Source: Blastocystis sp. Blastoise (taxonomy: Eukaryota; Protista; Bigyra: Opalinata). Taken from it: DNA of 64,000 nt. Both the position numbers and the translations under genes were made by a program. The stretch is taken from the NCBI GenBank assembly GCA_039096225.1, contig JBBPEB010000032.1:1-64000 (forward strand), written 5' to 3'. The notes under the pieces are model-generated. The model had not been told where the DNA came from, did not search any database, and saw nothing but the letters and a program-made list of their open reading frames with translations. Numbering within the stretch: the stretch's first letter is position 1; every line of letters starts with the position of its first letter. Shown here piece after piece: positions 1 through 64,000 of this stretch.

Positions 1-336
1 TATTTTATTATTATTCTATTCTATTATTATTTTATTCTATTATTATTCTATTATTATTATATTCTATTATTCTATTTATTATTATTATTCTATTTATTAT
101 TCTATTTATTATTATTATTATTCTTTTTATTCATTTATTCAAATTTTTTTTTATTTATTTATTTTATTTATTTATTTATTTTTATATTAAAAATCTAACC
201 CTAACCTAAAAATTATTTTATATTAACCCTAATCTATTATTTTAATATTCAATTTAACCCTAATCTATTATTTTTTTATATTAAATCTAAAACCATTATT
301 TTATATTAAACCTAACACTAACCCTAAACCCTAACC
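1..336. repeat. G-free low-complexity tract with degenerate telomere-like CCCTAA/CCTAA units (about 196-336)
   Basis: No G on the + strand from 1 to 347. (TATT/TATTC)n in 1-190, then ctaaccctaacctaaa, aaccctaatc twice, and aacctaacactaaccctaaaccctaacc directly abutting coding sequence. Confidence 0.7.
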
Positions 337-3300
337 AATCTTCTATTGTTTGGGATGATTCTAAAGCTGATAAATTATTTGATTCTAATTATAATACTCG
401 TTTTGCTACTTGGTTTAGAGCTTCTAATCCTGCTCCTCAATGGGGTGCTGGTAATCTTCAGAATTGGTCTTATGAAGTATTTAATAAATATTGTCTCGTT
501 AGTAATTTTGATGCTCCTCAAAGTGATCCTAAGAAGATTACTCTTTCTGCTTCTACTGGTAGTTGGGATAAAACTGCTTTTGAAATTATTGATGCTCAAG
601 AAAACATTGTATTTGATGGAAGATCTCAACGTATTTGTTTCTATATGCCTACTGTTACTAAAGCTTATAATATTTTCAAGATTTCTACTCTTGAAACTAA
701 TGTTGCTCCTCCTGATAATGATAGATTTTATCTTGCTGAATTAGAATTCTTCTTAATTGATTTCAATAAACTTACTATTCCTCCTCTTGATTATTCTGCT
801 TCTTCTGTTACTGGTTATACTAATTCTCAAATTACTTCTTTATATCCTACTTCTGAATATTATAGACAATTTACTACTACTCCTGCTCTTCCTGCTGGTA
901 TAACTCTTTCTGCTTCTACTGGTATTATTTCTGGTACTCCTACTGCTCCTTCTTCTGGTACTTATACTATTTCTGCTACTGGTATTACTGGTACTGCTAC
1001 TACTGTTAGTGTTACTATTACTATTCAAAATTGTGCTTTACCTAATGTTTTCTTTAAGGTAGTTTTCACTGGTATGGATGATGGTAATGCTTATCAAAAT
1101 AGTTTCTCTCTTAATAATATGGCTGGACAAGTTGTTGATAAATTAGATGCTTTCCCTAATTATTCGTCTATTGATTTAATTCGTGGTTATTGTCAACCTT
1201 CTGGTATCTATTCTCTTATTTTAAAGGATTCTTTCAGAGATGGTTGGAATAATGCTAAAGTTACTGTTTATAATTATGATGATATTATTATTCTTCAAGA
1301 TACTCTTCTTTCTGGTGAATCTCCTAAGACTTTATATATTAACGTTAACTATTTAGTTGCTTTTGGTCAAAGTTCTTGGAAGTATACTTCTACTGTTCAA
1401 TCTGGTACTGCTTGGGCTGCTACTACTTTCAGTGATGCTACTTGGTCTACTGCTCAAGCTGGTTCTTTCACTGGTTTAACTGGTACTACTGTTTATTATA
1501 GAACTACTTTTACTGTTAATAATCTTGAACAATTCTCTCTTTATGAATTATCTCTTAAGATTAAGGCTGGTATTATTGCTTATATTAATGGTAAAGAAGT
1601 TTATAGATATGCTGTTCCCACTACTGGTGTTACTTCTTCTACTTTAGCTAGTAGTGAATTTGCTAATGTAACTACTGTTACTTCTTCTGAATCTGCTCAA
1701 TATGGTAGTTTAGTTGCTGGTCAAAATGTTTTAGCTGTTGAGATTCATAGATATAGTGATGTACAAGAAACTACTTTTGATGCTCAAGTTGTTCTTCAAT
1801 TAACTGGTGCTAACAGAGTTTCTGGTGGTAGTGTTAAGACTAATGTTCCTGGATATAATACTGATCAATATCATGAAACTGAAGATATGGCTTTTGATGG
1901 AAATATTAATACTCGATATTATGGTAAGGGCTGTGGTCAATCTATTTGGTTAGAATATATTTATAATTATAATTGTAAAGAATATGTTTCTTCTGTTTCT
2001 GTTTCTCGTGCTTCTAATGGTAATCGTCAACCAACTGCTTTCATTTTATCTGCTTCTAATGATGGTATTAACTATATTACTCTTACTGGTGATTTCAATA
2101 TGACTTTTGGTGATTATATATCTTCTGCTGGTACTAGAACATATGATTTCTTTAATAAGGTTGCTTATAATAGATATAGATTCACTTTTGATATTCGTTC
2201 TTGTTCTGAAGGTGTAGAAATTGCTGAATTAGCACTTACATCTAAGAGAATTGGTACTACTTGTCCTGCTGAAGGTTCTTATAGTGAAACTATTGAAGGT
2301 GGCTATTCATTCCAAGAATGTCCTACTGGTTATACTGGTATTCAAAGAAGATTATGTAATGATGGTGTATTTGGTGATGTTGAATTCTTTTGTACTGTCG
2401 TTGCTCCGATAGACCTTTCTTATACTGCTTCTCCCTTTATTTATCATAAAAATATACCTGTTTCTCTTTCTCCTATTATAGTTGGTGCTGAATTGACATA
2501 TACTATTGATCCAGCTCTTCCTAATGGTCTTACTATTAATCAAATTAATGGTGTTATTTCTGGTACACCTACTACTTATTCTGATATTACTACTTATACT
2601 ATTACTGCTACGAATACAGCAGGTTCTGTTTCTACTACTATCATGATTTTTATAGATTTAGTTTTATGTACTTCTGAAGATAATTGGCCTCTTACTGAAA
2701 TTGGTCAAGAAGCTTCATTACCTTGTGAAGATCCTATTAATTATGAAGGATCAAGAACAAGATCTTGTCAACCTGGTTATCCTGCTGTTTGGGGTTCTAT
2801 TATTAATAATTGTGAATTAAGAATGCCAAGTATAATATATACAGTACCTACAACAATTGGATATAAGAATGTTCCTATTACACCTAATACTGCTCTTATT
2901 ACTGGAAGTAATTTAAATTCTCTTACTATATCTCCTTCTCTTCCTGATGGATTATTATTTAATCCTACTACTGGATTAATTTATGGTACACCCAAAACTT
3001 CTTCTTCTAATACTTATACTATTACTGTATCTAATTCAAGAGGAGAATCAACTGCTACTATTACTATTATTATTAGTATTATTTCATGTGTTGCTGAAAA
3101 TGGTTGGTCTGCTACAGAAATTGGCCAACAAATCACATTACCTTGTGAAGATCCTATTAATTATGAAGGATTTAGAACAAGATTATGTAAACTTGGTTAT
3201 CCTGCTATTTGGGATACTGTTATTAATAATTGTGAATTAAAGATGCCTTCAATTTCTTATAATACTAATGAAATTATTGGATATAAAAATATTGCTATTA

Positions 3301-4637
3301 CTCCAATTATGGCTTCTATTACAGGTGGTAATTTGAATCCTATTACTATATCTCCTTCTCTTCCTGATGGATTATCATTTAATCCTACTACTGGATTAAT
3401 TTATGGTATTCCTACTTCTGATTCTTCTAATAGTTATACTATTACTATTTCTAATTCAAGAGGAGAATCTACTGCTACTATTACTATTACGATAAGTATT
3501 ATTTCTTGTGTTGCTGAAAATGGTTGGTCTATGACTGAAATTGGTAACCAAATTACATTACCTTGTGAAGATCCTATTAATTATGAAGGATTTAGAACAA
3601 GATTATGTAAACTTGGTTATCCTGCTATTTGGGATACTGTTATTAATAATTGTGAATTAAAGATGCCTTCAATTTCTTATAATACTAATGAAATTATTGG
3701 ATATAAAAATATTGCTATTACTCCTATTATGGCTTCTATTACAGGTGGTAATTTGAATCCTTTTACAATATCTCCTTCTCTTCCTGATGGATTATCTTTT
3801 AATACTCAAAATGGTTTGATATATGGTATTCCTACTTCTGATTCTTCTAATAGTTATACTATTACTATTTCTAATTCAAGAGGAGAATCTACTGCTACTA
3901 TTACTATTACGATAAGTATTGTCTATTGTCCTTCTGATGATATTTGGCCTATTACAGAAAGAGGTATAACTGCTTATATTGAATGTCCTTTAGGTCAGTC
4001 AGGTATTCAAAGTCGTGTTTGTCAAAATACAGGTGTTGGTACTGCTTCTTGGCAAATTGCTGATAATTCTGAATGTTATGTATTTGCTGCCAGCGAAAAT
4101 CCAGGTGATAATAAAGTATTTATTGATATTCCTATAAAACTTGAAGGATTAACTGAAACTGCTTTTAATACTCCTTCTACTACTGAAACCTTTAGAACAC
4201 TTATTGTTCAATCTCTTACTAGTTATTCTATTCCTTCTTCTACTGTAAAGATTATTAGTGTTTCTAGTATATCTACTTATTCTGATGGTGTTTCAGTTAA
4301 TGTAAGAATAACTGCTAATGAATCTGATGAAGATAATATAAAGAATGATATAAATACTTTATTTACTGGTATTGATTCTATTCTTCTTAATGCATGTAAA
4401 ACAAGTAATGATTCTAATCTTCAAAATATTACTAATACTTCAATTAATGGAAAAATAGTATCAACAGGTAATTCTCTTTCAATTACAACAATTATTCTTA
4501 TTGTTGTTATTGTAATTCTTATTGTACTTTTGATATTATTATTTGTTCTAAAAAATATAAAGAAAGAAAAGAAATTACAACCTCACAAAAAAATAGAAGT
4601 TGAAACTGTAAAAGTTGAAAAACCTGTTACGTTATAA
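336..4637 (+). CDS. Large type I surface protein, 5'-truncated: discoidin/galactose-binding-like domains, putative-Ig (He_PIG-like) repeats, Cys-rich HRM-like repeats, SEA-like module, C-terminal TM helix
   Basis: The ORF 645..4637 frame stays open and coding-like back to about 336 (QSSIVWDDSKADKLFDSNYNTRF...). Motifs: LP.G(I/L)..N..TG.I.GTPT repeats; C...W..T..G....LPC......G.R.R.C.......W......C repeats; TM IILIVVIVILIVLLILLFVL followed by a basic tail. Paralogous to 35563-42716 but lacks its N-terminal part and signal peptide. Confidence 0.8.
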   Translation, partial: QSSIVWDDSKADKLFDSNYNTRFATWFRASNPAPQWGAGNLQNWSYEVFNKYCLVSNFDAPQSDPKKITLSASTGSWDKTAFEIIDAQENIVFDGRSQRICFYMPTVTKAYNIFKISTLETNVAPPDNDRFYLAELEFFLIDFNKLTIPPLDYSASSVTGYTNSQITSLYPTSEYYRQFTTTPALPAGITLSASTGIISGTPTAPSSGTYTISATGITGTATTVSVTITIQNCALPNVFFKVVFTGMDDGNAYQNSFSLNNMAGQVVDKLDAFPNYSSIDLIRGYCQPSGIYSLILKDSFRDGWNNAKVTVYNYDDIIILQDTLLSGESPKTLYINVNYLVAFGQSSWKYTSTVQSGTAWAATTFSDATWSTAQAGSFTGLTGTTVYYRTTFTVNNLEQFSLYELSLKIKAGIIAYINGKEVYRYAVPTTGVTSSTLASSEFANVTTVTSSESAQYGSLVAGQNVLAVEIHRYSDVQETTFDAQVVLQLTGANRVSGGSVKTNVPGYNTDQYHETEDMAFDGNINTRYYGKGCGQSIWLEYIYNYNCKEYVSSVSVSRASNGNRQPTAFILSASNDGINYITLTGDFNMTFGDYISSAGTRTYDFFNKVAYNRYRFTFDIRSCSEGVEIAELALTSKRIGTTCPAEGSYSETIEGGYSFQECPTGYTGIQRRLCNDGVFGDVEFFCTVVAPIDLSYTASPFIYHKNIPVSLSPIIVGAELTYTIDPALPNGLTINQINGVISGTPTTYSDITTYTITATNTAGSVSTTIMIFIDLVLCTSEDNWPLTEIGQEASLPCEDPINYEGSRTRSCQPGYPAVWGSIINNCELRMPSIIYTVPTTIGYKNVPITPNTALITGSNLNSLTISPSLPDGLLFNPTTGLIYGTPKTSSSNTYTITVSNSRGESTATITIIISIISCVAENGWSATEIGQQITLPCEDPINYEGFRTRLCKLGYPAIWDTVINNCELKMPSISYNTNEIIGYKNIAITPIMASITGGNLNPITISPSLPDGLSFNPTTGLIYGIPTSDSSNSYTITISNSRGESTATITITISIISCVAENGWSMTEIGNQITLPCEDPINYEGFRTRLCKLGYPAIWDTVINNCELKMPSISYNTNEIIGYKNIAITPIMASITGGNLNPFTISPSLPDGLSFNTQNGLIYGIPTSDSSNSYTITISNSRGESTATITITISIVYCPSDDIWPITERGITAYIECPLGQSGIQSRVCQNTGVGTASWQIADNSECYVFAASENPGDNKVFIDIPIKLEGLTETAFNTPSTTETFRTLIVQSLTSYSIPSSTVKIISVSSISTYSDGVSVNVRITANESDEDNIKNDINTLFTGIDSILLNACKTSNDSNLQNITNTSINGKIVSTGNSLSITTIILIVVIVILIVLLILLFVLKNIKKEKKLQPHKKIEVETVKVEKPVTL
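2660..3920 (+). repeat. Three tandem 420-bp (140-aa) Cys-repeat + Ig-module duplications inside the surface-protein gene
   Basis: ccttgtgaagatcctattaattatgaagga occurs at 2721, 3141 and 3561 (period 420). Units 2 and 3 are nearly identical at DNA level. Confidence 0.9.
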
Positions 4638-35562: not shown

Positions 35563-38500
35563 ATGATACATAATATATGCTTTATAACTTTGATTCTACT
35601 GATGTTACTAGATCAGAGTAAGTACTAACTTAATTTATATACTATATATATATAGGTTTCACAGCATGCCCAGAAAATACTATTGAAACCATTGTTACAC
35701 GACAATATGGGAATTGGGTACAATATGAAAGATTTTCAATTTATCAAGGTACTAGATCTAGTGGAACACTGGTTATTGACATGCAAGGAAACAATGGGCA
35801 AGAGTATTATCTTGAAACATTCAAACTCTGCTTAAAACCTACTCTTCACACAGTTGTAGCCATTTCTTCGTAATTATTTTAGTTTAGGAATATCTATTTT
35901 GTTTGATTTGAATAAAGCGTAGTGTTGTTAAATATATTTATTATGTTTCTTCTTTTTTTATGCATATTATTTGCAAAGAAAAATATATTATTGATATGAA
36001 ATATTTTTTTTTTCTTAAATTCTTTTTTAAAAATTTATTTCAATATTAAAAAAATAATAATATTAATATTTTTTTATATAGTTGGGGAAAAGGTTGGAGT
36101 TATGGTTCTTATATAATGTTATCTATTCATTTATCCGTATTAAGTAAATATACTTTGAGTCAAGGTTCTTATGGTGAATTCTCTTTCTATCGTAAATATA
36201 TGTTTAATTTATATTTGCATTTTATTAATAATTCTATTATAAAAATTTCTTCATAACTATAAAGACTAATATTATATATATATAGCTTATTACATACTAG
36301 ATACTAGTAGTTCATGGAGATATACATCTACTCCTATTCCTTATAAAGAATGGATTTATTATTCTTATGATGATTCGAATTGGAATTATTATTATAGTGG
36401 TCGATTTCCTACTCCTTCTTCTATTACTCGTTACTATAGACGTACTATTCAAATCAATAAAGATATTTCTGGCATTACGTTATTAGAATTATCCATTAAA
36501 TCAAAAGAAGGTATTATTATCTATATAAATTCAAAATTATTAACTTATCATTATGTTCAAAATACCGATCTATCTCCCAATGATTATGCAATTCAATCAG
36601 ATCCAGCATATACCTTAAAATCGTATTCAGGTAGTTATCAATATTATGTTGGTAATTCTACAGATATTATTATAGCTATTGAAGTTCATCAAGCAAAGAA
36701 TGTACCTATTACTAATGATGAATTTGAAGCTACATTATTATTTCTATCTGGAGATCAAGTACAACGTAGTATTAATGGCACATCTACTTCTACTCCTCTA
36801 TATAAAGAAGAAAATAAAGCTGATAATGCATTTGATGGTGTATATACAACGAAATGGTCAGGATTAATGATCAATGAACGTGCTTCCTTATTATATACAT
36901 TCCCAAATCAACGTAAAGAATGGATTAATACAATAGATATGGCATGTGATGTTTCGGATTATAAATCTCTTCCTAAATCCTTCTTTATTTCTGGATCTAA
37001 TGATAATGGCACTACTTGGGAACCTATTGCTTTCTATAGTAATTTAATGTTTACGAATATCAATGATTTACAAACATTTTATTTCTTATCTAATATACAT
37101 CTATTTAATATTATCAATATTACATTTACAGAAACCTATCAAACCTCTACTTATGTCTCTGTATTAAATATCAATTTCTATGCAAGTAATAAAGAGATTC
37201 TACAAGAATATTCTTATGGCTCTGATTCATTTACTTGGTTTATTAGTATAGAGAAAGTGAATATCTCTCCTTTTCATTCTGGTGTATCCGATTATAGAAT
37301 GAAATCTCCTTCTTCTCTTCCTAAAGGATTGACATTAGATTCTATTTCTGGAACTATTAGTGGATATCCTACAGTTACTTTTAGTGATGATTTTATTATA
37401 GAAGCGTATAGCTATTTATATGAGAAAACTATTACTATTACATTTCATGTAGATATCTTAGTGTGTAGTAATGATAAATATGTAATTGTTGATTTAATAA
37501 AGAATTCAGCAGCTGCTTCTTATGAATATGAATATATAGAATTAATTAATATAAATAATACTACTATATATTTAGATCATGCTATTTCTTCTTCTACATA
37601 TTATAGAACCTTATGTTTATTAAAAGGTATATATATACTACGTTTATCATCATCAGGATCTATTTCTTGGTCTACTTCTTCTAATTTAAAAATATCCTTA
37701 AGAGATGATATTTACTCAAATACTATTTTCTATGGTACTTTACATAATGGATATTCACAAGAATCTCCAATTGCATTAGATTATCTGATAAATAACCGTG
37801 ATTCTTCTGTTCTTTGTAAATTAGATAATGATACATTCATAGATTCTACTTGGTATACAAATGATTATTTTACTTCTTCTTCTTCTTCTCCTATAACAAA
37901 TACATGGTTTTCATGTTTAAATACGTCTTCTCGATTGAAATATAATAGTTATAATCGTTATTATCGTACTACAATTAATATTGATGATACTAATAAATAT
38001 CAAGGTATGGAAATCATATTAAAAGGTCCTAATGGTGTATTATTATATATAAATGAACAAATAGCTTATAAAACAGATCTTAATGATACTTCTATTCCTA
38101 TTACTGATAATACTATGCCTTCTAATAATAATACTAGCGTTACTCATAGAACTATTTCTTTATCAATGTATTATTTTCATAATGGTATCAATACTATTGC
38201 TTTTGCTACTCTATATAGTAGAACAACAAAATTACCTTATACAAATAATGTAGAATTAAGTATACATTATTTATCATCTAGTGCTATATATCCTAGACTA
38301 TGGAATATATTTGGTTCTATTAATACTACGGAAGTAGATAATTATGTTTCTGTTTTATTTGATTTGAAGTACTATATTTCATTTACTTTATCTTATAAAA
38401 CTCAAGTTGAAAAACCACGATTAATATCTGTATTTTATGAATCTAAATATCGATTTGAATATATTAATAAGTATTGTATTACTATTAATTCTAATTATCC

Positions 38501-41500
38501 TAACAATGGAATTGAATCATGGGCATTCTATGGTTGTGATTATGAACAATTAAATTGTATATTATTAGATACTCAAGAAGATATGAAATGGAGTTCTTCT
38601 ATTAGTAGACGATGTTTCTATACATATCCTCATATACAATCCTATCCTATTTATTTATTATATATATATAAACCTAAAGAAGATAATCAATATAATTCTC
38701 AAATGAATCAATTAGAATTTTATATGTTTAATGAGAATTCTATTCTTATTCCTGAATTAACATATTCTCTAAATCCTATTATTGGATATATAGGAATAGA
38801 TATATCTACTTCTTATCCTAATGATTATTATTTATCATTCAGTATTATAGAAGGAACATTACCAAAAGGATTATCTTTTAATTTCTATACAGGTATTATT
38901 GTAGGTATACCTTTAGAAACTACAGATAATACTATTATTATTATACAAGGAAGAGATATTCGAAATGAATATAAGAATGCTACATTAACTATACAAATAT
39001 ATACATGTATATCTCCAAATATATTATTTAAATCTGTGTTTTCTCCATCTTGGGATGATACTTATAATTCATTTTCTTATTATATTCAAGATAGAGAAAC
39101 AAAAGAAATTATTGGTAATTATACTCATTATACTAAAATAACAGATAATATAGTTTCTAATTGTCGAAAAACATTTGATTATTCGATTACTTTAATTACT
39201 CAAAGTGATTATGGTTGGCTTTCTTCTTCTGTTACTGTTCTATTAAAAGATGGTACGAGTGTATTTACAGGCACTTTATCTCCTTCAGAATATGAAAAAG
39301 AATATTATTTTTCTGTATATGATGTTTTATTACCTAATGAAATACAATGGACTTATTATGATGATACTTTAACTCATAATCCTCTTCCATCTGATTGGAT
39401 GAAGATAGATTATCAACCAATAGGATGGAAGACAGAAACTATATTAAATATGTCCCCACCTCAAGGTATAACACAATATTATCGTATGAATTATTATATT
39501 ACTACATTACAGAATATAGCTGTTCTTTCTTATACAATAACATTAAGAGGTGGTTGTATATTATATATAAATGGAAAAGAAACATTTCGATATGGATTAG
39601 AAAATATATCTATAACTCGTGATACATTCTCTATATTTGATCCTTATTTACCTGAAACAGTAGGTGGAAGTATTCATTTACAATTAAGTCCTGCTTCTAT
39701 AAATATAGGGAATAATACTATAGCTGTAGAAATACATCGTGGTAAACGTATATTTAGTGATACTATATTTAGTGCTAGCTTTGTACCTATATTAAATAAT
39801 ATACGTAATCAGAATAATGGTTATGGATCTACTTCTTATGAAGATACTAATAATCAATATTATATTCAAAATGCATTTGATAATAATAAGAACACTGTTT
39901 ATAGATATAACTCACAATGTGTTGGTGTTTCTATTTCATATATTTATAATAATCAAATAAAAGAATATATTAATCGATATTCTATAAGTAATTCATATTT
40001 TTGTAATATATATACTCCTTCAGGATGGACATTAGAAGGTTCTAATGATAATATTAATTATACTATTATACATCAAGTAAAACAACAATATTTTATGTAT
40101 TCATATGAAGAAAAAGTTTATTCTATTATTAGTGATATTCCTTATTATATATATAAGTTAACTATTGATGAATGTGAAAATAATTATCTTGAAAGTGATG
40201 AAAAATCTTTATGTACTTCAGAATTAGCTGCTCAAATATCTGAATTCTCATTATTCACAGGACTTATGGATAATTATTGTACATCAATTGATGGATATCC
40301 TTCTGTTTATTATGGAGAATATTCATATAAATCTTGTGGATTATTTTATACAGGTCAAAAGAAACGACTCTGTTCAGATAAAGGTATTTGGGGTAATGAA
40401 GATAGTAAGAATTGTATTTTATCTCCTACAACTATATTTAATTATGATCAATCAATCTATTTATTATATGCTTCAACATCTATACGTATAAATGTTCCTT
40501 TCATAGATGCTCTCTATATGAATTTCACTAGTTCTCCTTCTCTTCCTTCTTCTTTCTCATTAAATACAGCTACTGGTGTTATTACTAGTATTCCTTCTTC
40601 TACTTATATTCCTCTTACACAATATACTATAACTGCTTCTTCTAGTCATTATAATACTACTATATCCACAATTTTATGTATATCTGTTGCCACAGATATG
40701 AATCGTGATTTCTGTAAAGAAGATGATGTATGGTCAAGAACCTATCAAGGAAATACTACGACTATCGATTGTCCTTCTGGTTTTAGTGGTTATTATCAAC
40801 GATCTTGTATTCCTCCTTCAACTCCGAATGGAATTCCTTCTTGGTCTTCTATTGAGAATCATTGTGTTTTATCTTCTAATTATATAGTTTTATCCTATCC
40901 ACATTCATCTTATGTATTTGTATTGAATCGAACTGTTTCTGTTGAACCTATAGTAACTTCAGGTATCGTTGAGAAATGGTCTATTACTCCTTCTTCTCTT
41001 CCTAATGGTCTTCTATTTAATAATGGAATTATTTCAGGAATACCTTTATTATATACAGAAAAGAATAATTATACAATAACAGCAGAAGGTCAATATAATA
41101 ACGTTACTATTCTATTAATAATAAGTACTGATACTTATTTATGTTTTGAAGATGGTGAATGGCCTCCAGCTAGATATAATACAGATAATTATTTATCTTG
41201 TCCTGATGGATATATAGGTATACGAGAACGAAGATGTTTAGATTCTACATCTTCAAAGAATTTCTATGTAACAGAAGATGGATATACTGCTATAAAATGG
41301 GATCAAGAACATTATAATTGTAAATTAAAATCTCCTTCTATTTCTATGACTCCTTCTTATATACAAGCAGTGATTAATTCTGAATTATATCCTATTACTC
41401 CATTATGTATAGGTATATGTACTTCATGGTCTATTATTCCTTCTCTTCCTGAAGGACTTATTATGAATGTAACTACAGGTACTATCACAGGTATACCTAA

Positions 41501-42716
41501 ATCTCCTTATTCTGAATCTATTCATATGATTATTGCTTCAAATACTGATAATTATTCATATATACCTATATCAATAACAGTAATCAATCCTCAATGTCCT
41601 GCAGAAGGTCGTTTTCCTGCTACAAATAAAGGAGAAACAATCACTTTAGATTGTGGAGATCTATATAAAGAAGGTTCTATTACACGAATATGTAGTAATG
41701 ATTATATACCCAAATGGACTAATATATCCGATACGTGTATATATAAAACACCTGTAGTTACTTATCCTATTACTTATATTGTAGCTTATATACAAGATCC
41801 ATTAATAGGAATATCTCCTAATATTCAGAATTATATTAATTCATGGACTGTAACTCCTGATTTCCCCACGGGAATCACATTAAATACGAAAAGTGGAGTT
41901 ATTGAAGGAACACCTATTATACTATCATCTTTAAAACCTTATAAAATAACTGCAAGTAATCCAGATAAGCAAGTGACTATAGATATACAACTAGTGATTC
42001 GAGAACATACATGTAAAGAAGAAGATGATTGGCCAGAAACTTCTATTGGTCAAACAGCTTATTTATTATGTACTTCTATTCGAACTTCTTATAGAGCACG
42101 TGAATGTGTTCGTAATGGAGTTTCTGCTCTATGGTCCAATGAAAATAGAACACGTTGTTTATTACCTTCTTCTTCTCCTTCTTCTTCTTATGTATATATA
42201 GAGTATACTATATATATATCAGGAATAAGAAGTGAATCAATTCAAGGAAAACAAATTTACATATTATTAAATACATTAGATAGTTATTTATCTGTTTATT
42301 CTATTCCTTCTTCTCATATATGGATTATGTCATTAGAAGATATATATCTTAATAATAATAATAAGATTCGTATGATTATTCGTATTATGGATATTAAAAG
42401 AGAAGTTGAGAAATGGAAGGATACAGTATATCATTATCTTATGAATGAATATAAAGATGCAAATAATGATATTCAAGTATTATTATCGGATTGTACAATC
42501 ACTAGTAATTATGATGACATACATATTATAGAAAATATCAGTAATGGTTCTTTAATATATATTATTATCGGTAGTGTAATAGGAATAACAGTATTCATTA
42601 TTGTCGGATATTTTATTTATCATTATTGTAAATATCATATAGTGAATAATAATTATAATCGTAAGGTATATAAAGATATATATATCAAACAAGGTTTACT
42701 CTCGTCTATACAATAA
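35563..42716 (+). CDS. Giant type I surface protein (signal peptide, discoidin/galactose-binding-like, putative-Ig and Cys-rich HRM-like repeats, SEA-like module, TM), about 2,250 aa
   Basis: Signal-like MIHNICFITLILLMLLDQ at 35563. Three 5' introns (about 35618-35655, 35870-36081, 36192-36285), then a long exon containing ORF 36867..42716. LPKGL...TG.I.G.P repeats. TM IYIIIGSVIGITVFIIVGYFIY. Confidence 0.82.
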
Positions 42717-48708: not shown

Positions 48709-49079
48709 TTTTTTATGATTATATTATTTATCTACAAATAATTTATAATTTAAATATTCTTTACTATATATATATATTTATCTGTTGTTTAAGAACTCAT
48801 TAATTGTCGTTTTTTTTCATATATTCAAAAACTGTCTTTCTATACTCTTCTTTTTAAATAAATTATATTAACAAAACAATGATAATAAATAAGACAATGA
48901 TAATTAATAACTTTAAAATATTCAGAAAATTGAATAAGATAAGGATACTATAAGGAAATAAAAAACCAAAGTATATATAAACACATATAATATAAAATAG
49001 AAGGTCTTTTTAAATATTAATAAAAAATATATGAAATATAAAAATTATTGAATTATTAAATCTATATATAAATAAAAAT

Positions 49080-50780
49080 AAAACATTATGATTTAGATTT
49101 TATTGATAATTATTATTCGATAAAAACCGTATTATCTAATCATAAATCATAAAAAGTAAATGAAATAGTGATCACTACATAAATATATATAATAAAAAAA
49201 AAAACATATATATAAATATATAAAACACACTAGAAGATATTTAGATTTCTTGTGGATACATTAAAGAATAAAAACGATATTATTCAATCATATATCTATA
49301 AAAAAAGTAAATAAAACAAGTGATAACTCTATAAATAATATAAAATTAAAAAAAAAAAGTATTATAATTTTTGTAGCCAATAATAATAGACAAAAAACGG
49401 CATTATCCAATTATATATATCTATAAAAATTAGATATACTTTATAGTTATATAAATATAAAAAGTTAAATAAATAAATAAAAAAGAATACACTATAGAAT
49501 ATTTAAAAACGTTTGATAATACTTTTAGATAAAAACGATATTATCCAAAATGAAATATTAATAAATAAATAAAAATAGTGTATAACATATATATAAATAA
49601 AAAGAATATATAAATAAATAGAATACTAACAAAGTATTTATATTCTTTCAATAAATAAAATAGAAACAAACGGCAGTATCAATTGTATATATCTTATAAA
49701 TAAATATACTTTATAGTAATAAATAAATAAAAGGATATATATAAATACTAATAAGATATTCATAATTTTTTAAACGAAAAATCAGTAGATAAAAACGATA
49801 TTATCCAAATATAAATATTATAAATAAACATAATAGTAATCAATATATATATAATATATAATAAAAAGTATTTTATTCCGTTATATAAAAAATAGATAAA
49901 AACGGTATTATCAAATTCTATATATATAAAATAAATATACTTTATAAATAAAAAAGTATATAGAAAAAACTAGTAAGTAAAATTGATTCTTTGAATAATT
50001 AATGAATAAAAACGATATTATTCAATTAGAAATCATAAAAACAAATATACTTTACAGTTATAAAAAATAGTAAGTATTTTTATTCCTTTCAATAAATGAA
50101 ATAGGTAAAAACGGTATTATCCAATCATATATCTTAAAAATAAGTATACTTAACCGTAATATATAAATAAATATAAAAATAAATAAATAAAAAAGAATAC
50201 ACTAGATAATATTTATATTCTTTCAATAATAAAAATACTGGGTAAAAACGGTATTATCCAATATAAATATATATATTAAAAATAATAAACAGAATAGTGG
50301 ATAATATATAAAAAAATATTAAAAAAAAACTAAAAAAGTATTAAGATTATTTGAACAATAATAAACTAGATAGAAACGATACCATCTAATAATAATCTTG
50401 ATATATAAATATACTTTATAGTCAAATATATAATAAAAATTAGACATATAAAAAGTATTTTATTTCGTTATATAAAAATAGATAAAAACGATATTATCAG
50501 ATTCTATATATATAAAACAAATATACTTTATAAATAGATAAATAATTAAAATATATAAATAAATTACTAAAAAGGAAATACATAATAAACTTGAATAGTG
50601 AATAAAAACGATATTACTCAATTATATATAGAACAAATACACTTTATAGTAATATATAAACAAAATAGATATATATACATATATAGAAAAATAAAAGTAT
50701 TTATATTCTTTCAATAAATAAAATAGATACAAACGGCAGTATCAATTATATATATCTTATAAATTAATATAAAGAATTAT
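49080..50780. repeat. Array of 14 diverged ~100-150-bp units, each a hairpin with a conserved AAACGRYA loop
   Basis: Loops start at 49124, 49272, 49395, 49533, 49668, 49793, 49900, 50010, 50109, 50246, 50374, 50486, 50606 and 50731, flanked by GATAA/TTATC or covarying equivalents. Confidence 0.85.
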
Positions 50781-50954
50781 AAATATAAAAAATAAACAAT
50801 TTATATATAAATAAATAAAATCAAAAAAAAAAAATTATAAAACAAATATAAATTATAAATAAATAAAAGAAAACCTTCGAAATTATATATATATATATTC
50901 ATAGAGTTGAGGAGAAAACAATAGATAAGGAATAATTATATGGAGAGAAGAAAT

Positions 50955-51480
50955 ATATATATATAGTTAACAAACAAAATTAAATTGAATTATAAAATAT
51001 TAGATATAAATAACATCAAATATATAGATAACAAAATGATATATAATATAAAAAAAATAGATTGAGTTATAAAAAATGAGATATAATAACATCAAATATA
51101 TAGGTAACAAATTGATATATAATATTAAAAAAATAGATTGAGTTATAAAAATGAGATATAATAACATCAAATATATAGTTAACAAATTAAATTAAATTAT
51201 AAAAAATTGAGATATAATAACATCAAATATATAGTTAACAAATTGATATATAATATAAAAATAGATTGAATTATAAAAAATGAGATATAATAACATCAAA
51301 TATAGTTAACAAATTAAATTAAATTATATAAAAAATGAGATATAAATAACATCAAATATATAGATAACAAAATGATATATAAAAATTGAGATAAAATAAC
51401 ATCAAATATATAGGTAACAAATTGATATATAAATAACATCAAATATATAGGTAACAAATTGATATATAATATAATATAAA
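50955..51480. repeat. Second degenerate tandem repeat (core GATAT..TAACATCAAATATATAG.TAACAAA), about 8 copies, variable 37-75-bp period
   Basis: aacatcaaatat occurs at about 51012, 51087, 51162, 51219, 51292, 51348, 51398 and 51435. Confidence 0.85.
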
Positions 51481-52155
51481 AAAATATTATAAAACAAATA
51501 AGAAGAATATATATATATATACATTCAATAGGACGGGAAATAGATCACATAATGATCCAAAGTACATATATATATATATATAGAAAGGTATTATAACAAT
51601 TGACAACGAACTAATTTTTATTAGGTTTTAATTATATATTACTTTTTTTTTTTTATTATTTTTAATTGTAACTAACTACTTAATAATTTTTTTTTATTTT
51701 TATTTTTTTTTAAATATATACATATTTTTTTATGTATATTTATAATTATTATTATTTTTTTTTTATTTTATTTTAATAATTTTTTTTTAATAATTTTTTT
51801 TTTAATTATTATTTTTAAAGATATAATAATATTATTATTATTATTATTATTAAATTGTTATAATTACCTTATATTATATAAGAATTATACTAAGAGGATG
51901 AGAGAAGGAATTATTATGAATAAAACGATATATATATATATATAAGATTCACGGGATAAAAACTTATAAATATACATATAATTAAAAAAAAATGAAAAAT
52001 ATATTTAAAAAATAATATATATAACTACTAAATATATATATTATAAATGTAGAAGAAAATATATTTATCAAATAAATAATAATTCCAAAAAAAATTTACA
52101 TATAAATATCCTCTTAATAAAAAAGAAAATGGAAAAGTGAAAAAAAAATATAACA

Positions 52156-52338
52156 ATAAATATTGTTATTAGAGTATAATAAGAAAAAGTTTAAAAAAAG
52201 GGAAAATTGATATTCATATAAAGAATAATCAAATTAATAAATAACAATAAATATAAATATTGTTATTAGAGTATAATAAGAAAAAGCTTAAAAAAAGTGA
52301 AAATTGATATTCATATAAAGAATAATCAAATTAATAAA
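52156..52338. repeat. ~85-bp direct duplication (period about 97 bp) just 3' of the giant coiled-coil gene
   Basis: ataaatattgttattagagtataataagaaaaag...attgatattcatataaagaataatcaaattaataaa occurs at 52156 and 52253. Confidence 0.85.
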
Positions 52339-52373
52339 AAAAATATATATATATATATAATATAAAATAGATC

Positions 52374-64000
<11,627 letters not shown>

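What the first reader, a model, noticed from the sequence alone, without database searches (positions are those of the whole stretch)
49080..50780. Array of 14 structure-conserved hairpins with an invariant-length AAACGRYA loop and compensatory stem changes
Seen: in ~90% AT intergenic DNA between convergent genes (NAA25 and the giant coiled-coil gene), 14 units 99-148 bp apart each carry an 8-nt loop (AAACGATA, AAACGGTA, AAACGGCA; once AAACCGTA). The stems covary: GATAA/TTATC in most units, GAATAA/TTATTC (49266, 50004), GATAC/GTATC (50726; related unit at 49663), TAGATAG/CCATCTA with a G-C closing pair (50367), and TGGGTAA/TTATCCA with a G-U pair (50239). Many units extend into ~85-110-nt imperfect fold-backs closed by ACACTA(T)/(A)TAGTG (e.g. 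49489-49581, 50199-50299) or AAGTAT/ATACTT (e.g. 49865-49942, 50071-50152), while the intervening sequence drifts freely. Units 5/14 and 7/12 are sister copies, so the array grew by unit shuffling. Inference: selection acts on single-stranded structure plus loop sequence, not on primary repeat identity as in ordinary satellites. Candidates are a multi-hairpin ncRNA (a protein-sponge RNA analogous to bacterial CsrB, or a polycistronic small-RNA precursor) or an array of ssDNA/cruciform recognition sites. I do not recognise a described element like this.
Basis: partly seen in the sequence, partly recalled or inferred. Interest (0 to 1): 0.85.

Follow-up and report, generated by a model that had tools for sequence, protein, structure and literature searches.

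The report
Tandem array of degenerate palindromic hairpin units
A 1.7-kb stretch between two genes of a tortoise gut protist (Blastocystis) holds 14 diverged repeat units, each a weak fold-back with a strongly conserved 8-base tip. The hairpins are real, but nothing shows that they act as an RNA, and they occur at only one recently duplicated locus.

Summary

The spacers do not drift freely. The units align end to end (mean identity 67%), so this is a diverged ~124-bp minisatellite. The genome is Blastocystis sp. Rus-B ("Blastoise").

For hairpin maintenance:
- Six loop positions are fixed in 83 of 84 cells, while flanks deviate 33-38%.
- There are three independent compensatory stem changes (tree-aware p 0.004-0.04).
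- Each unit's two arms fit each other better than other units' arms (p<5e-5).
- Fold z-scores are -1.3 (+) and -2.1 (-), against -0.1 for control AT-rich DNA.

Against an RNA gene:
- The conserved hairpin is marginal (about -1 to -3 kcal/mol) and the arms are only 72% complementary.
- Rfam gives no match.
- The only other copy is a 98% identical paralog inside a 34-kb segmental duplication. Between the two copies the cores change as fast as the flanks.

Transcription and related species could not be tested.

Best reading (0.42): a locus-specific palindromic minisatellite that forms hairpins when single-stranded, with a sequence-constrained tip. DNA versus RNA is unresolved. Earlier notes of this scan report other hairpin clusters in this genome, on other DNA.

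The parts
49080..50780 (.). Diverged tandem array of 14 units (99-148 bp, mean about 124 bp; mean pairwise identity 67%). Each unit is a degenerate fold-back.
49119..49136 (+). Unit 1 core, GATAA-AAACCGTA-TTATC. The loop C is derived; the paralog has G.
49266..49285 (+). Unit 2 core, GAATAA-AAACGATA-TTATTC.
49389..49407 (+). Unit 3 core, GACAA-(A)AAACGGCA-TTATC. It has an extra A and a C.A mismatch.
49528..49545 (+). Unit 4 core, GATAA-AAACGATA-TTATC. Outer stem ATACACTAT/ATAGTGTAT.
49663..49680 (+). Unit 5 core, GAAAC-AAACGGCA-GTATC. C-G closing pair and one A.A mismatch.
49788..49805 (+). Unit 6 core, GATAA-AAACGATA-TTATC.
49895..49912 (+). Unit 7 core, GATAA-AAACGGTA-TTATC.
50004..50023 (+). 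Unit 8 core, GAATAA-AAACGATA-TTATTC.
50104..50121 (+). Unit 9 core, GGTAA-AAACGGTA-TTATC, with a G.T pair.
50239..50260 (+). Unit 10 core, TGGGTAA-AAACGGTA-TTATCCA.
50367..50388 (+). Unit 11 core, TAGATAG-AAACGATA-CCATCTA. G-C closing pair and one A.C mismatch.
50481..50498 (+). Unit 12 core, GATAA-AAACGATA-TTATC.
50600..50619 (+). Unit 13 core, GAATAA-AAACGATA-TTACTC, with one A.C mismatch.
50726..50743 (+). Unit 14 core, GATAC-AAACGGCA-GTATC. The paralog has AATAC.
48841..64000 (.). Left part of a 34-kb direct segmental duplication (C21:48841-82903 against 288490-322546, 94-99% identity). The array sits at its left edge.
52374..62258 (-). Giant coiled-coil reading frame (3294 aa, continuing upstream). 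The array lies 1.6-3.3 kb downstream of its stop codon on the same strand.

Best explanation
The array is a locus-specific, AT-rich palindromic minisatellite. It has 14 head-to-tail, about 124-bp units in the 3.5-kb spacer between a NatB/NAA25-like gene (+) and a giant coiled-coil gene (-) of Blastocystis sp. Rus-B.

Shown: each unit is a degenerate fold-back whose tip is the 18-22-nt core GATAA-AAACGRYA-TTATC. The tip sequence is constrained base by base. The arms of each unit are more complementary to each other than to the arms of other units.

Inferred: the units adopt hairpins when single-stranded, most simply as DNA during replication or repair. Arm complementarity is renewed by template switching or hairpin-templated repair rather than by strong selection on an RNA fold. 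The tip is, or was, a recognition site for a sequence-specific factor.

The present sequence gives no evidence of a functional RNA. The cores have evolved as fast as the flanks since the 34-kb duplication that made the only other copy.
For: - Tandem homology over the whole unit.
- Loop positions fixed in 83/84 cells, against 36% deviation at loop positions 6-7, 14% in the stem and 33-38% in the flanks.
- Apical stem 83.5% paired against 23-51% in slid controls, with 3 compensatory events.
- Matched column-pair background: 11% of pairs show at least 1 compensatory type and 0.12% show at least 2.
- Cognate arms -10.7 kcal/mol against -7.6 for non-cognate, permutation p<5e-5. With DNA parameters, -9.0 against -6.75.
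- Arm alignment score 38.1 against 29.4, p<5e-5.
- Unit fold z -1.33 (+) and -2.05 (-), against -0.10 for 36 control AT-rich windows.
- Unit-specific multi-base inverted repeats: 12 bp in unit 3 and 14 bp in unit 11. Template-switch events produce this pattern (PMC8794818, PMC8604942).
- Paralog comparison: 4 substitutions and 1 indel in 252 core nt, against about 18 substitutions and 6 indels in 1642 other nt.
- Only two arrays in 33 Mb, both inside the duplication.
- The array lies about 240 bp inside a duplication breakpoint.
Against: - A purely mutational process does not explain why six loop bases are almost invariant while two bases between them vary freely. It also does not explain why a C and a G survive in 86% AT DNA. 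Some recognition of the tip must be assumed, and no factor is known.
- Isolated core hairpins are barely stable as DNA (mean about -1 kcal/mol, 5-6 units at 0), but all 14 fold as - strand RNA (-0.8 to -5.6).
- A.C-type arm mismatches, which are G.U pairs in a - strand RNA, outnumber G.T-type 34 to 11. The - strand also has the lower z-score. These weak hints favour a - strand transcript.
- The paralog test has low power, and 28 redundant units would weaken selection on each one.
Confidence: 0.42

Rival explanations
1. The array is a transcribed multi-hairpin RNA. It is made most likely from the - strand, as a very long 3' UTR or downstream transcript of the giant coiled-coil gene. Its 14 tips (UAYCGUUU on that strand) would be displayed for a loop-specific RNA-binding protein that acts in scaffolding, sponging, localisation or stability control.
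For: - Motif-type constraint on the loop.
- Compensatory closing-pair changes.
- All 14 cores fold as - strand RNA, mean -3.1 kcal/mol.
- Lower z-score on the - strand.
- Excess of A.C-type over G.T-type arm mismatches, 34 to 11, against about 28 to 17 expected from composition.
- The array was duplicated together with the gene and lies on the gene's downstream side.
Against: - No expression data could be obtained.
- RNAalifold finds only a 5-bp hairpin of -1.2 kcal/mol and no conserved outer stem.
- The arms are 72% complementary, with 122 A.A mismatches.
- No Rfam match even at E<=1.
- No constraint on the cores between the paralogs. Five differences were seen against 1.3 expected under the historical constraint, my Poisson estimate p about 0.01.
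- Tree-aware covariation is only marginal.
Confidence: 0.27
2. The array is a set of double-stranded binding sites for a sequence-specific DNA-binding protein. The core holds inverted AGATAA/TTATC(C) GATA-like half-sites. It could act as an enhancer, boundary, replication or termination element between the convergent genes. The hairpin would then be incidental.
For: The 18-22-bp core is conserved, with base-specific constraint and 2 free positions. The site is repeated 14 times at roughly nucleosome-scale spacing. The array lies in an unusually long 3.5-kb spacer, against a median of 645-719 bp in tortoise isolates (PMC10690189).
Against: A protein site does not predict symmetric double changes that keep complementarity but destroy the GATA core in both half-sites, as GAATAA/TTATTC does in units 2, 8 and 13. 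It also does not predict co-adapted outer arms. The motif is absent from the rest of the 33-Mb genome, which is odd for a transcription-factor site.
Confidence: 0.15
3. The array is a relic of a mobile element, for example tandem ends or subterminal repeats of an extinct Helitron-like or fold-back element. Its hairpin would once have been recognised by a transposase acting on single-stranded DNA.
For: The genome carries at least 51 Helitron_like_N matches, most within open frames of 1.5-1.6 thousand residues, so hairpin-recognising enzymes are abundant. An earlier unchecked note reports Helitron terminal hairpins with compensatory changes. The units are fold-backs.
Against: The core motif and the covariance model hit nothing outside the two arrays, and so none of the Helitron copies. 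The other DNA matches are simple ATAA repeats. No array lies at the other end of the duplicated segment. No Y1 transposase was found. The Helitron termini themselves could not be fetched.
Confidence: 0.1

Closest known systems
Dyad-symmetric (non-B-DNA-forming) satellites and palindromic AT-rich repeats
   Same: It is AT-rich tandem DNA whose units contain inverted repeats able to form hairpins or cruciforms. It sits next to a rearrangement breakpoint, here the edge of a 34-kb duplication.
   Different: The array is small (1.7 kb) and confined to one locus. The arms are only 72% complementary. The tip is conserved base by base, which such repeats are not known to need. The resemblance rests on my own knowledge and on no library match.
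Hairpins created and maintained by replication template switching (PMC8794818; PMC8604942)
   Same: It shows multi-base, unit-specific arm complementarity and apparent one-step compensatory changes in short inverted repeats.
   Different: Those studies concern rRNA and other RNA genes or coding inverted repeats, not tandem arrays. Template switching can also invert the spacer, but the loop here never inverts.
Repeat-borne hairpins of long non-coding RNAs (Xist A-repeat type)
   Same: It has several copies of a short conserved hairpin separated by A/U-rich, less conserved linkers.
   Different: No transcript is known here. The hairpins are AT-rich and marginally stable. The lineage is unrelated. 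The comparison is from memory.
CsrB/RsmZ protein-sponge RNAs
   Same: It has many hairpins carrying one loop motif.
   Different: Those RNAs are bacterial, with GGA loops bound by CsrA. There is no GGA here and no Rfam match.
Bacterial REP/BIME elements
   Same: They are short imperfect palindromes clustered between convergent genes, with compensatory stem changes.
   Different: REPs are scattered genome-wide and mobilised by RAYT (Y1) transposases. Here there is a single locus and no Y1_Tnp in the genome.

Membership tests
Tandem repeat (minisatellite) | Head-to-tail units that are homologous over their whole length | tested here: met
   TRF finds periods of 99 and 137 at 76% matches. The 14 units align with a consensus over about 100 nt. 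Mean pairwise identity is 67%.
Any Rfam RNA family | Covariance-model match | tested here: not met
   No match at gathering score in the window. No match at E<=1 in 48800-51600.
Structured RNA with conserved fold | Significant covariation once relatedness is accounted for | tested here: inconclusive
   The covariation score exceeds 500/500 shuffles and all slid controls. A tree-aware null gives p=0.0375 by types and 0.0045 by cells. The consensus fold is only 5 bp at -1.2 kcal/mol.
Structured RNA with conserved fold | Transcribed | not testable with these tools
   Only one weak holder run was found and none is on record as RNA.
Polycistronic miRNA / small-RNA precursor | Long near-perfect stem, with conservation highest in a stem arm and lowest in the loop | tested here: not met
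   The arms are 72% complementary with 122 A.A mismatches. Conservation peaks in the loop. A Piwi-domain gene does exist in the genome.
CsrB-type sponge RNA | GGA motifs in hairpin loops | tested here: not met
   The loops are AAACGRYA and none contains GGA.
Transposon terminal or subterminal repeats (Helitron, CACTA, fold-back) | The same motif at the ends of multiple element copies in the genome | tested here: not met
   The pattern with up to 1 mismatch and the covariance model R1 find only the two paralogous arrays. None lies near the 51 Helitron matches. The Helitron termini were not inspected directly.
Centromeric satellite | One array per chromosome, with the family shared among chromosomes | tested here: not met
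   There are two arrays 240 kb apart on one contig and none on the other 33 contigs.
CRISPR-like array | Conserved repeats separated by unrelated spacers | tested here: not met
   The 'spacers' are homologous between units. The metagenome matches to the core word were bacterial CRISPR arrays unrelated to this unit.
Element under purifying selection today | Fewer changes in the cores than in the flanks between the two paralogous arrays | tested here: not met
   There are 5 differences in 252 core nt, against about 24 events in 1642 other nt. Two of the five break stem pairs and one hits the fixed loop G. Power is low.

The most novel reading that the evidence does not exclude
The array is a natural multi-hairpin display. 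Its 14 copies (28 with the paralog) of a loop-specific recognition hairpin would be read as RNA, most likely as the - strand tail of the giant gene's transcript, or as single-stranded DNA. A dedicated factor would read them, and stems and arms would be kept paired by compensatory evolution. That would make it a eukaryotic counterpart of sponge or scaffold RNAs in a protist where no such RNA is known. Other hairpin clusters with different loops in this genome (C16:646520-646930) might belong to the same class.
Probability: 0.22. Interest if true: 0.7.

Novelty: new variant of a known kind. Interest (0 to 1): 0.4.

Why it matters
If the tip motif and the arm pairing are really maintained, this would be one of few cases in which a tandem repeat evolves under constraint on single-stranded structure rather than on primary sequence. 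It would also be a first structured non-coding element in Blastocystis. If instead the symmetry is renewed by template switching, the array is a clean natural example of that mutation process acting repeatedly within one locus. It also warns that compensatory changes in repeat-borne hairpins need a mutational null. In either case the array marks the edge of a recent 34-kb duplication in a genome whose enlarged intergenic DNA is unexplained (PMC10690189).

Tried and rejected
- **Expression.** Expression is therefore untested.
- Two later steps come near them. First, a look-up by id of the library protein P0081 (852 aa, the NAA25-like product), which may include residues encoded there, returned nothing. 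Second, the Pfam scan was limited to its residues 1-450.
- **Metagenome pattern scan.** It returned 120 or more loci. Those with many copies of the core word are mostly bacterial CRISPR arrays with a 36-nt repeat ending in AAAACGATAT; the rest are other unrelated repeats. None resembles the unit.
- **Whole-array DNA search of the own genome.** The non-paralog hits are ATAA-type simple repeats without cores or unit words.
- **Orthologous loci.**
  - The C-terminal part of the giant protein found no homologs.
  - No record exists for its exact product.
  - The representatives search with an NAA25-like exon found only this genome's own protein and a 60-aa fragment on a 1.5-kb contig.
- **GATA-factor site reading.** Units 2, 8 and 13 lose the GATA core in both half-sites while keeping complementarity.
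- **snoRNA and tRNA readings.** No tRNA was found. By eye, the consensus has no C/D-type boxes on either strand.
- **Strand call from wobble pairs.** In the 7-bp apical stem, 84 pairs form on + and 88 on - (my count), so the strand cannot be called.

Full report
**Organism and setting**

The window is the first 64 kb of contig C21 (1.15 Mb) of a 33.3-Mb, 34-contig genome with about 20% GC. Exact and near-exact protein matches carry the name Blastocystis sp. "Blastoise" (WA158_ locus tags). The assembly statistics fit strain Rus-B from a Russian tortoise: 33 scaffolds, 33.3 Mb and 23.1% GC (PMC10690189).

That paper reports long intergenic regions (median 645-719 bp) and 12% low-complexity DNA in the tortoise isolates. 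It does not mention this element.

Degenerate CCCTAA repeats at window 195-340 suggest that the contig starts near a chromosome end.

The array lies in a 3.5-kb spacer.
- On the left is a + strand gene whose library product (852 aa) scores 25.5 bits on NatB_MDM20, just under the 27.6-bit cut-off, on residues 1-450.
- On the right is a - strand reading frame of 3294 aa. It is coiled-coil-like and low-complexity at its C-terminus, and its stop is at 52374.

**The observation**

The word AAAACGRYA is about nine-fold over chance in the window, and ten of its 14 matches are in the array. All the listed stem variants and outer closures are present. Units 5/14 and 7/12 are the closest pairs, at 81% and 85%.

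Four details need correcting.
- The region is 86% AT.
- Unit 3 has one extra A.
- Four units have an internal stem mismatch.
- The sequence between cores is not free. The units align along about 100 nt to a consensus with conserved blocks on both sides of the core, and TRF detects the repeat.

The object is therefore a diverged minisatellite with a mean unit identity of 67%.

**Distribution**

A 17-nt core pattern with up to one mismatch, a whole-array DNA search and a covariance model of the core (R1) each recover only one other place in 33 Mb. That place is C21:288729-290419, which is 98% identical. The remaining DNA hits are ATAA-type simple repeats without any core or unit word.

The second array is part of a direct 34-kb segmental duplication, C21:48841-82903 against 288490-322546. 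Its left boundary is sharp and lies about 240 bp before unit 1.

The element is thus not a dispersed family, not a centromere-type satellite, and not shared with the genome's many Helitrons. Rfam gives nothing, even at E<=1. A metagenome scan with a two-core pattern returned bacterial CRISPR arrays and other unrelated repeats.

**Is the hairpin more than chance?**

Three results say yes.

1. Conservation is highly uneven. Deviation from the consensus is:

| Region | Cells deviating | Share |
|---|---|---|
| Loop positions 1-5 and 8 | 1 of 84 | 1% |
| Loop positions 6-7 | 10 of 28 | 36% |
| 5-bp stem | 20 of 140 | 14% |
| Proximal flanks | 64 of 196 | 33% |
| Outer flanks | 139 of 364 | 38% |

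Two freely varying bases sit between invariant ones, and a C and a G are retained in 86% AT DNA. This looks like base-specific constraint, not a cold spot or a conversion tract.

2. The apical stem pairs in 83.5% of cells, against 23-51% when the partner is slid. Three pairs show changes on both sides. By descent these are three events:
   - A-T to C-G at the closing pair in the ancestor of units 5 and 14;
   - A-T to G-C at the same pair in unit 11;
   - G-C to A-T in units 2, 8 and 13.

   Among column pairs of similar variability in the same alignment, 11% show one compensatory type and 0.12% show two. A null that re-places each column's changes on the flank-based unit tree gives p=0.0375 for three types and p=0.0045 for six cells. 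This is suggestive but not decisive, the more so because this scan has examined thousands of features in this genome.

3. The arms of each unit fit each other better than the arms of other units.
   - Duplex energy is -10.7 against -7.6 kcal/mol, with 0 of 20,000 permutations as good. With DNA parameters it is -9.0 against -6.75.
   - Collinear arm alignment scores 38.1 against 29.4, again with 0 of 20,000.

   Independent decay from a palindromic ancestor does not predict this, so the symmetry has been renewed unit by unit. Whole units also fold better than dinucleotide shuffles (mean z -1.33 on +, -2.05 on -). Thirty-six control AT-rich windows from the same 64 kb average -0.10.

**What weakens the structured-RNA reading**

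- RNAalifold keeps only the 5-bp tip hairpin, at -1.2 kcal/mol, and no outer stem.
- Isolated 22-nt cores fold at about -1.9 (RNA +), -3.1 (RNA -) and -1 kcal/mol (DNA), and several units sit at zero.
- The arms are only 72% complementary, and 122 of the mismatches are A opposite A, because both arms are A-rich on the + strand.
- Between the two paralogous arrays the 252 core nucleotides carry 4 substitutions and 1 indel, against about 18 substitutions and 6 indel events in the other 1642 nt.
  - Two of the core changes break stem pairs and one hits the fixed loop G.
  - Both copies carry derived damage.
  - With the historical rate ratios I expect about 1.3 differences, so 5 gives a Poisson p of about 0.01. 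This is my calculation.
  - Either constraint was relaxed recently, or selection per unit is weak in a redundant array, or the historical pattern has another cause.

**DNA or RNA, and which strand**

This stays open. Weak hints favour a - strand RNA:
- the lower z-score on that strand;
- all 14 cores folding on that strand;
- 34 A.C-type against 11 G.T-type arm mismatches, where composition predicts about 28 to 17, giving my binomial estimate of p about 0.06.

The - strand is the sense strand of the giant gene, whose stop lies 1.6 kb upstream of the array on that strand, and the gene and array were duplicated together.

Hints for a DNA-level process are the breakpoint position and the unit-specific multi-base inverted repeats (12 bp in unit 3, 14 bp in unit 11). 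Template switching creates such repeats in one step and can also produce apparent compensatory changes (PMC8794818; PMC8604942). I did not reconstruct any such event.

**Context in this genome**

Earlier unchecked notes of this scan list other hairpin clusters. I located one at C16:646520-646930. It has five GAATG-AGGTGTAAG-CATTC hairpins with identical stems, followed by CCTGTC-loop hairpins on different stems. Short hairpins with conserved G/C-containing tips in AT-rich spacers may therefore be a recurring feature of this genome. That would favour a general process over a dedicated factor for each.

The genome has a Piwi-domain gene, at least 51 Helitron_like_N matches, most within open frames of 1.5-1.6 thousand residues, and no Y1 transposase.

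**Verdict**

The best reading is a locus-specific palindromic minisatellite with a constrained tip that forms hairpins in single-stranded nucleic acid.

| Reading | Probability |
|---|---|
| DNA-level palindromic minisatellite | 0.42 |
| Transcribed hairpin array | 0.27 |
| Double-stranded binding-site array | 0.15 |
| Mobile-element relic | 0.10 |

**What could not be done**

The one protein-id look-up that may touch them is described under Tried and rejected.
- Related tortoise isolates could not be inspected, because no accessible records were found.

Noticed in passing
window 48841-64000 and on to C21:82903; paralog C21:288490-322546: A direct 34-kb segmental duplication (94-99% identity) lies 240 kb apart on one contig. 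It carries both arrays and the giant coiled-coil genes. The left boundary is sharp, with unrelated sequence to its left in both copies.
   Followed up: partly
window 50955-51480: A second, unrelated-looking tandem array (76/129-bp units, 83-92% matches) lies directly right of the hairpin array. Its copy number differs between the two paralogs. Its units contain an ATCAA...TTGAT dyad and a TAGATAAC word reminiscent of the first array's TAGATAA.
   Followed up: partly
window 50758: Unit 14 of the window copy lacks 27 nt, including the ATACTTTATAG block, that its paralog retains.
   Followed up: yes
window 195-340: Degenerate CCCTAA telomere-like repeats lie near the start of contig C21, so the array is about 49 kb from a probable chromosome end.
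   Followed up: no
genome-wide (e.g. C4:1529821, C34:607239, C10:150153): There are at least 51 Helitron_like_N matches with nearly identical scores. Most lie within open frames of 1.5-1.6 thousand residues, which suggests a recently active Helitron family. ATAA-type simple repeats lie a few kb from several copies.
   Followed up: partly
L179:1290-1925 (C16:646509-647144): Another hairpin cluster: five GAATG-AGGTGTAAG-CATTC hairpins with identical stems, then CCTGTC-loop hairpins on different stems.
   Followed up: partly
C26:481274-482069: A Piwi-domain (Argonaute-like) gene scores 170 bits, so small-RNA machinery may exist in this Blastocystis lineage.
   Followed up: no
window 36867-42716 and 645-4637: Large He_PIG plus HRM-domain receptor-like genes have 90-96% identical paralogs on other contigs. 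This points to much recent duplication in this genome.
   Followed up: no
L064, L079, L094, L116, L123, L127 and others (metagenome contigs): Bacterial CRISPR arrays have a 36-nt repeat ending in AAAACGATAT and a 66-bp period. They matched the core word by chance.
   Followed up: yes
window 51640-51830: The + strand switches abruptly from A-rich to T-rich and back inside the spacer. Just before it, at about 51520-51640, lies a small island richer in G+C that contains a GATCA...TGATC dyad.
   Followed up: no
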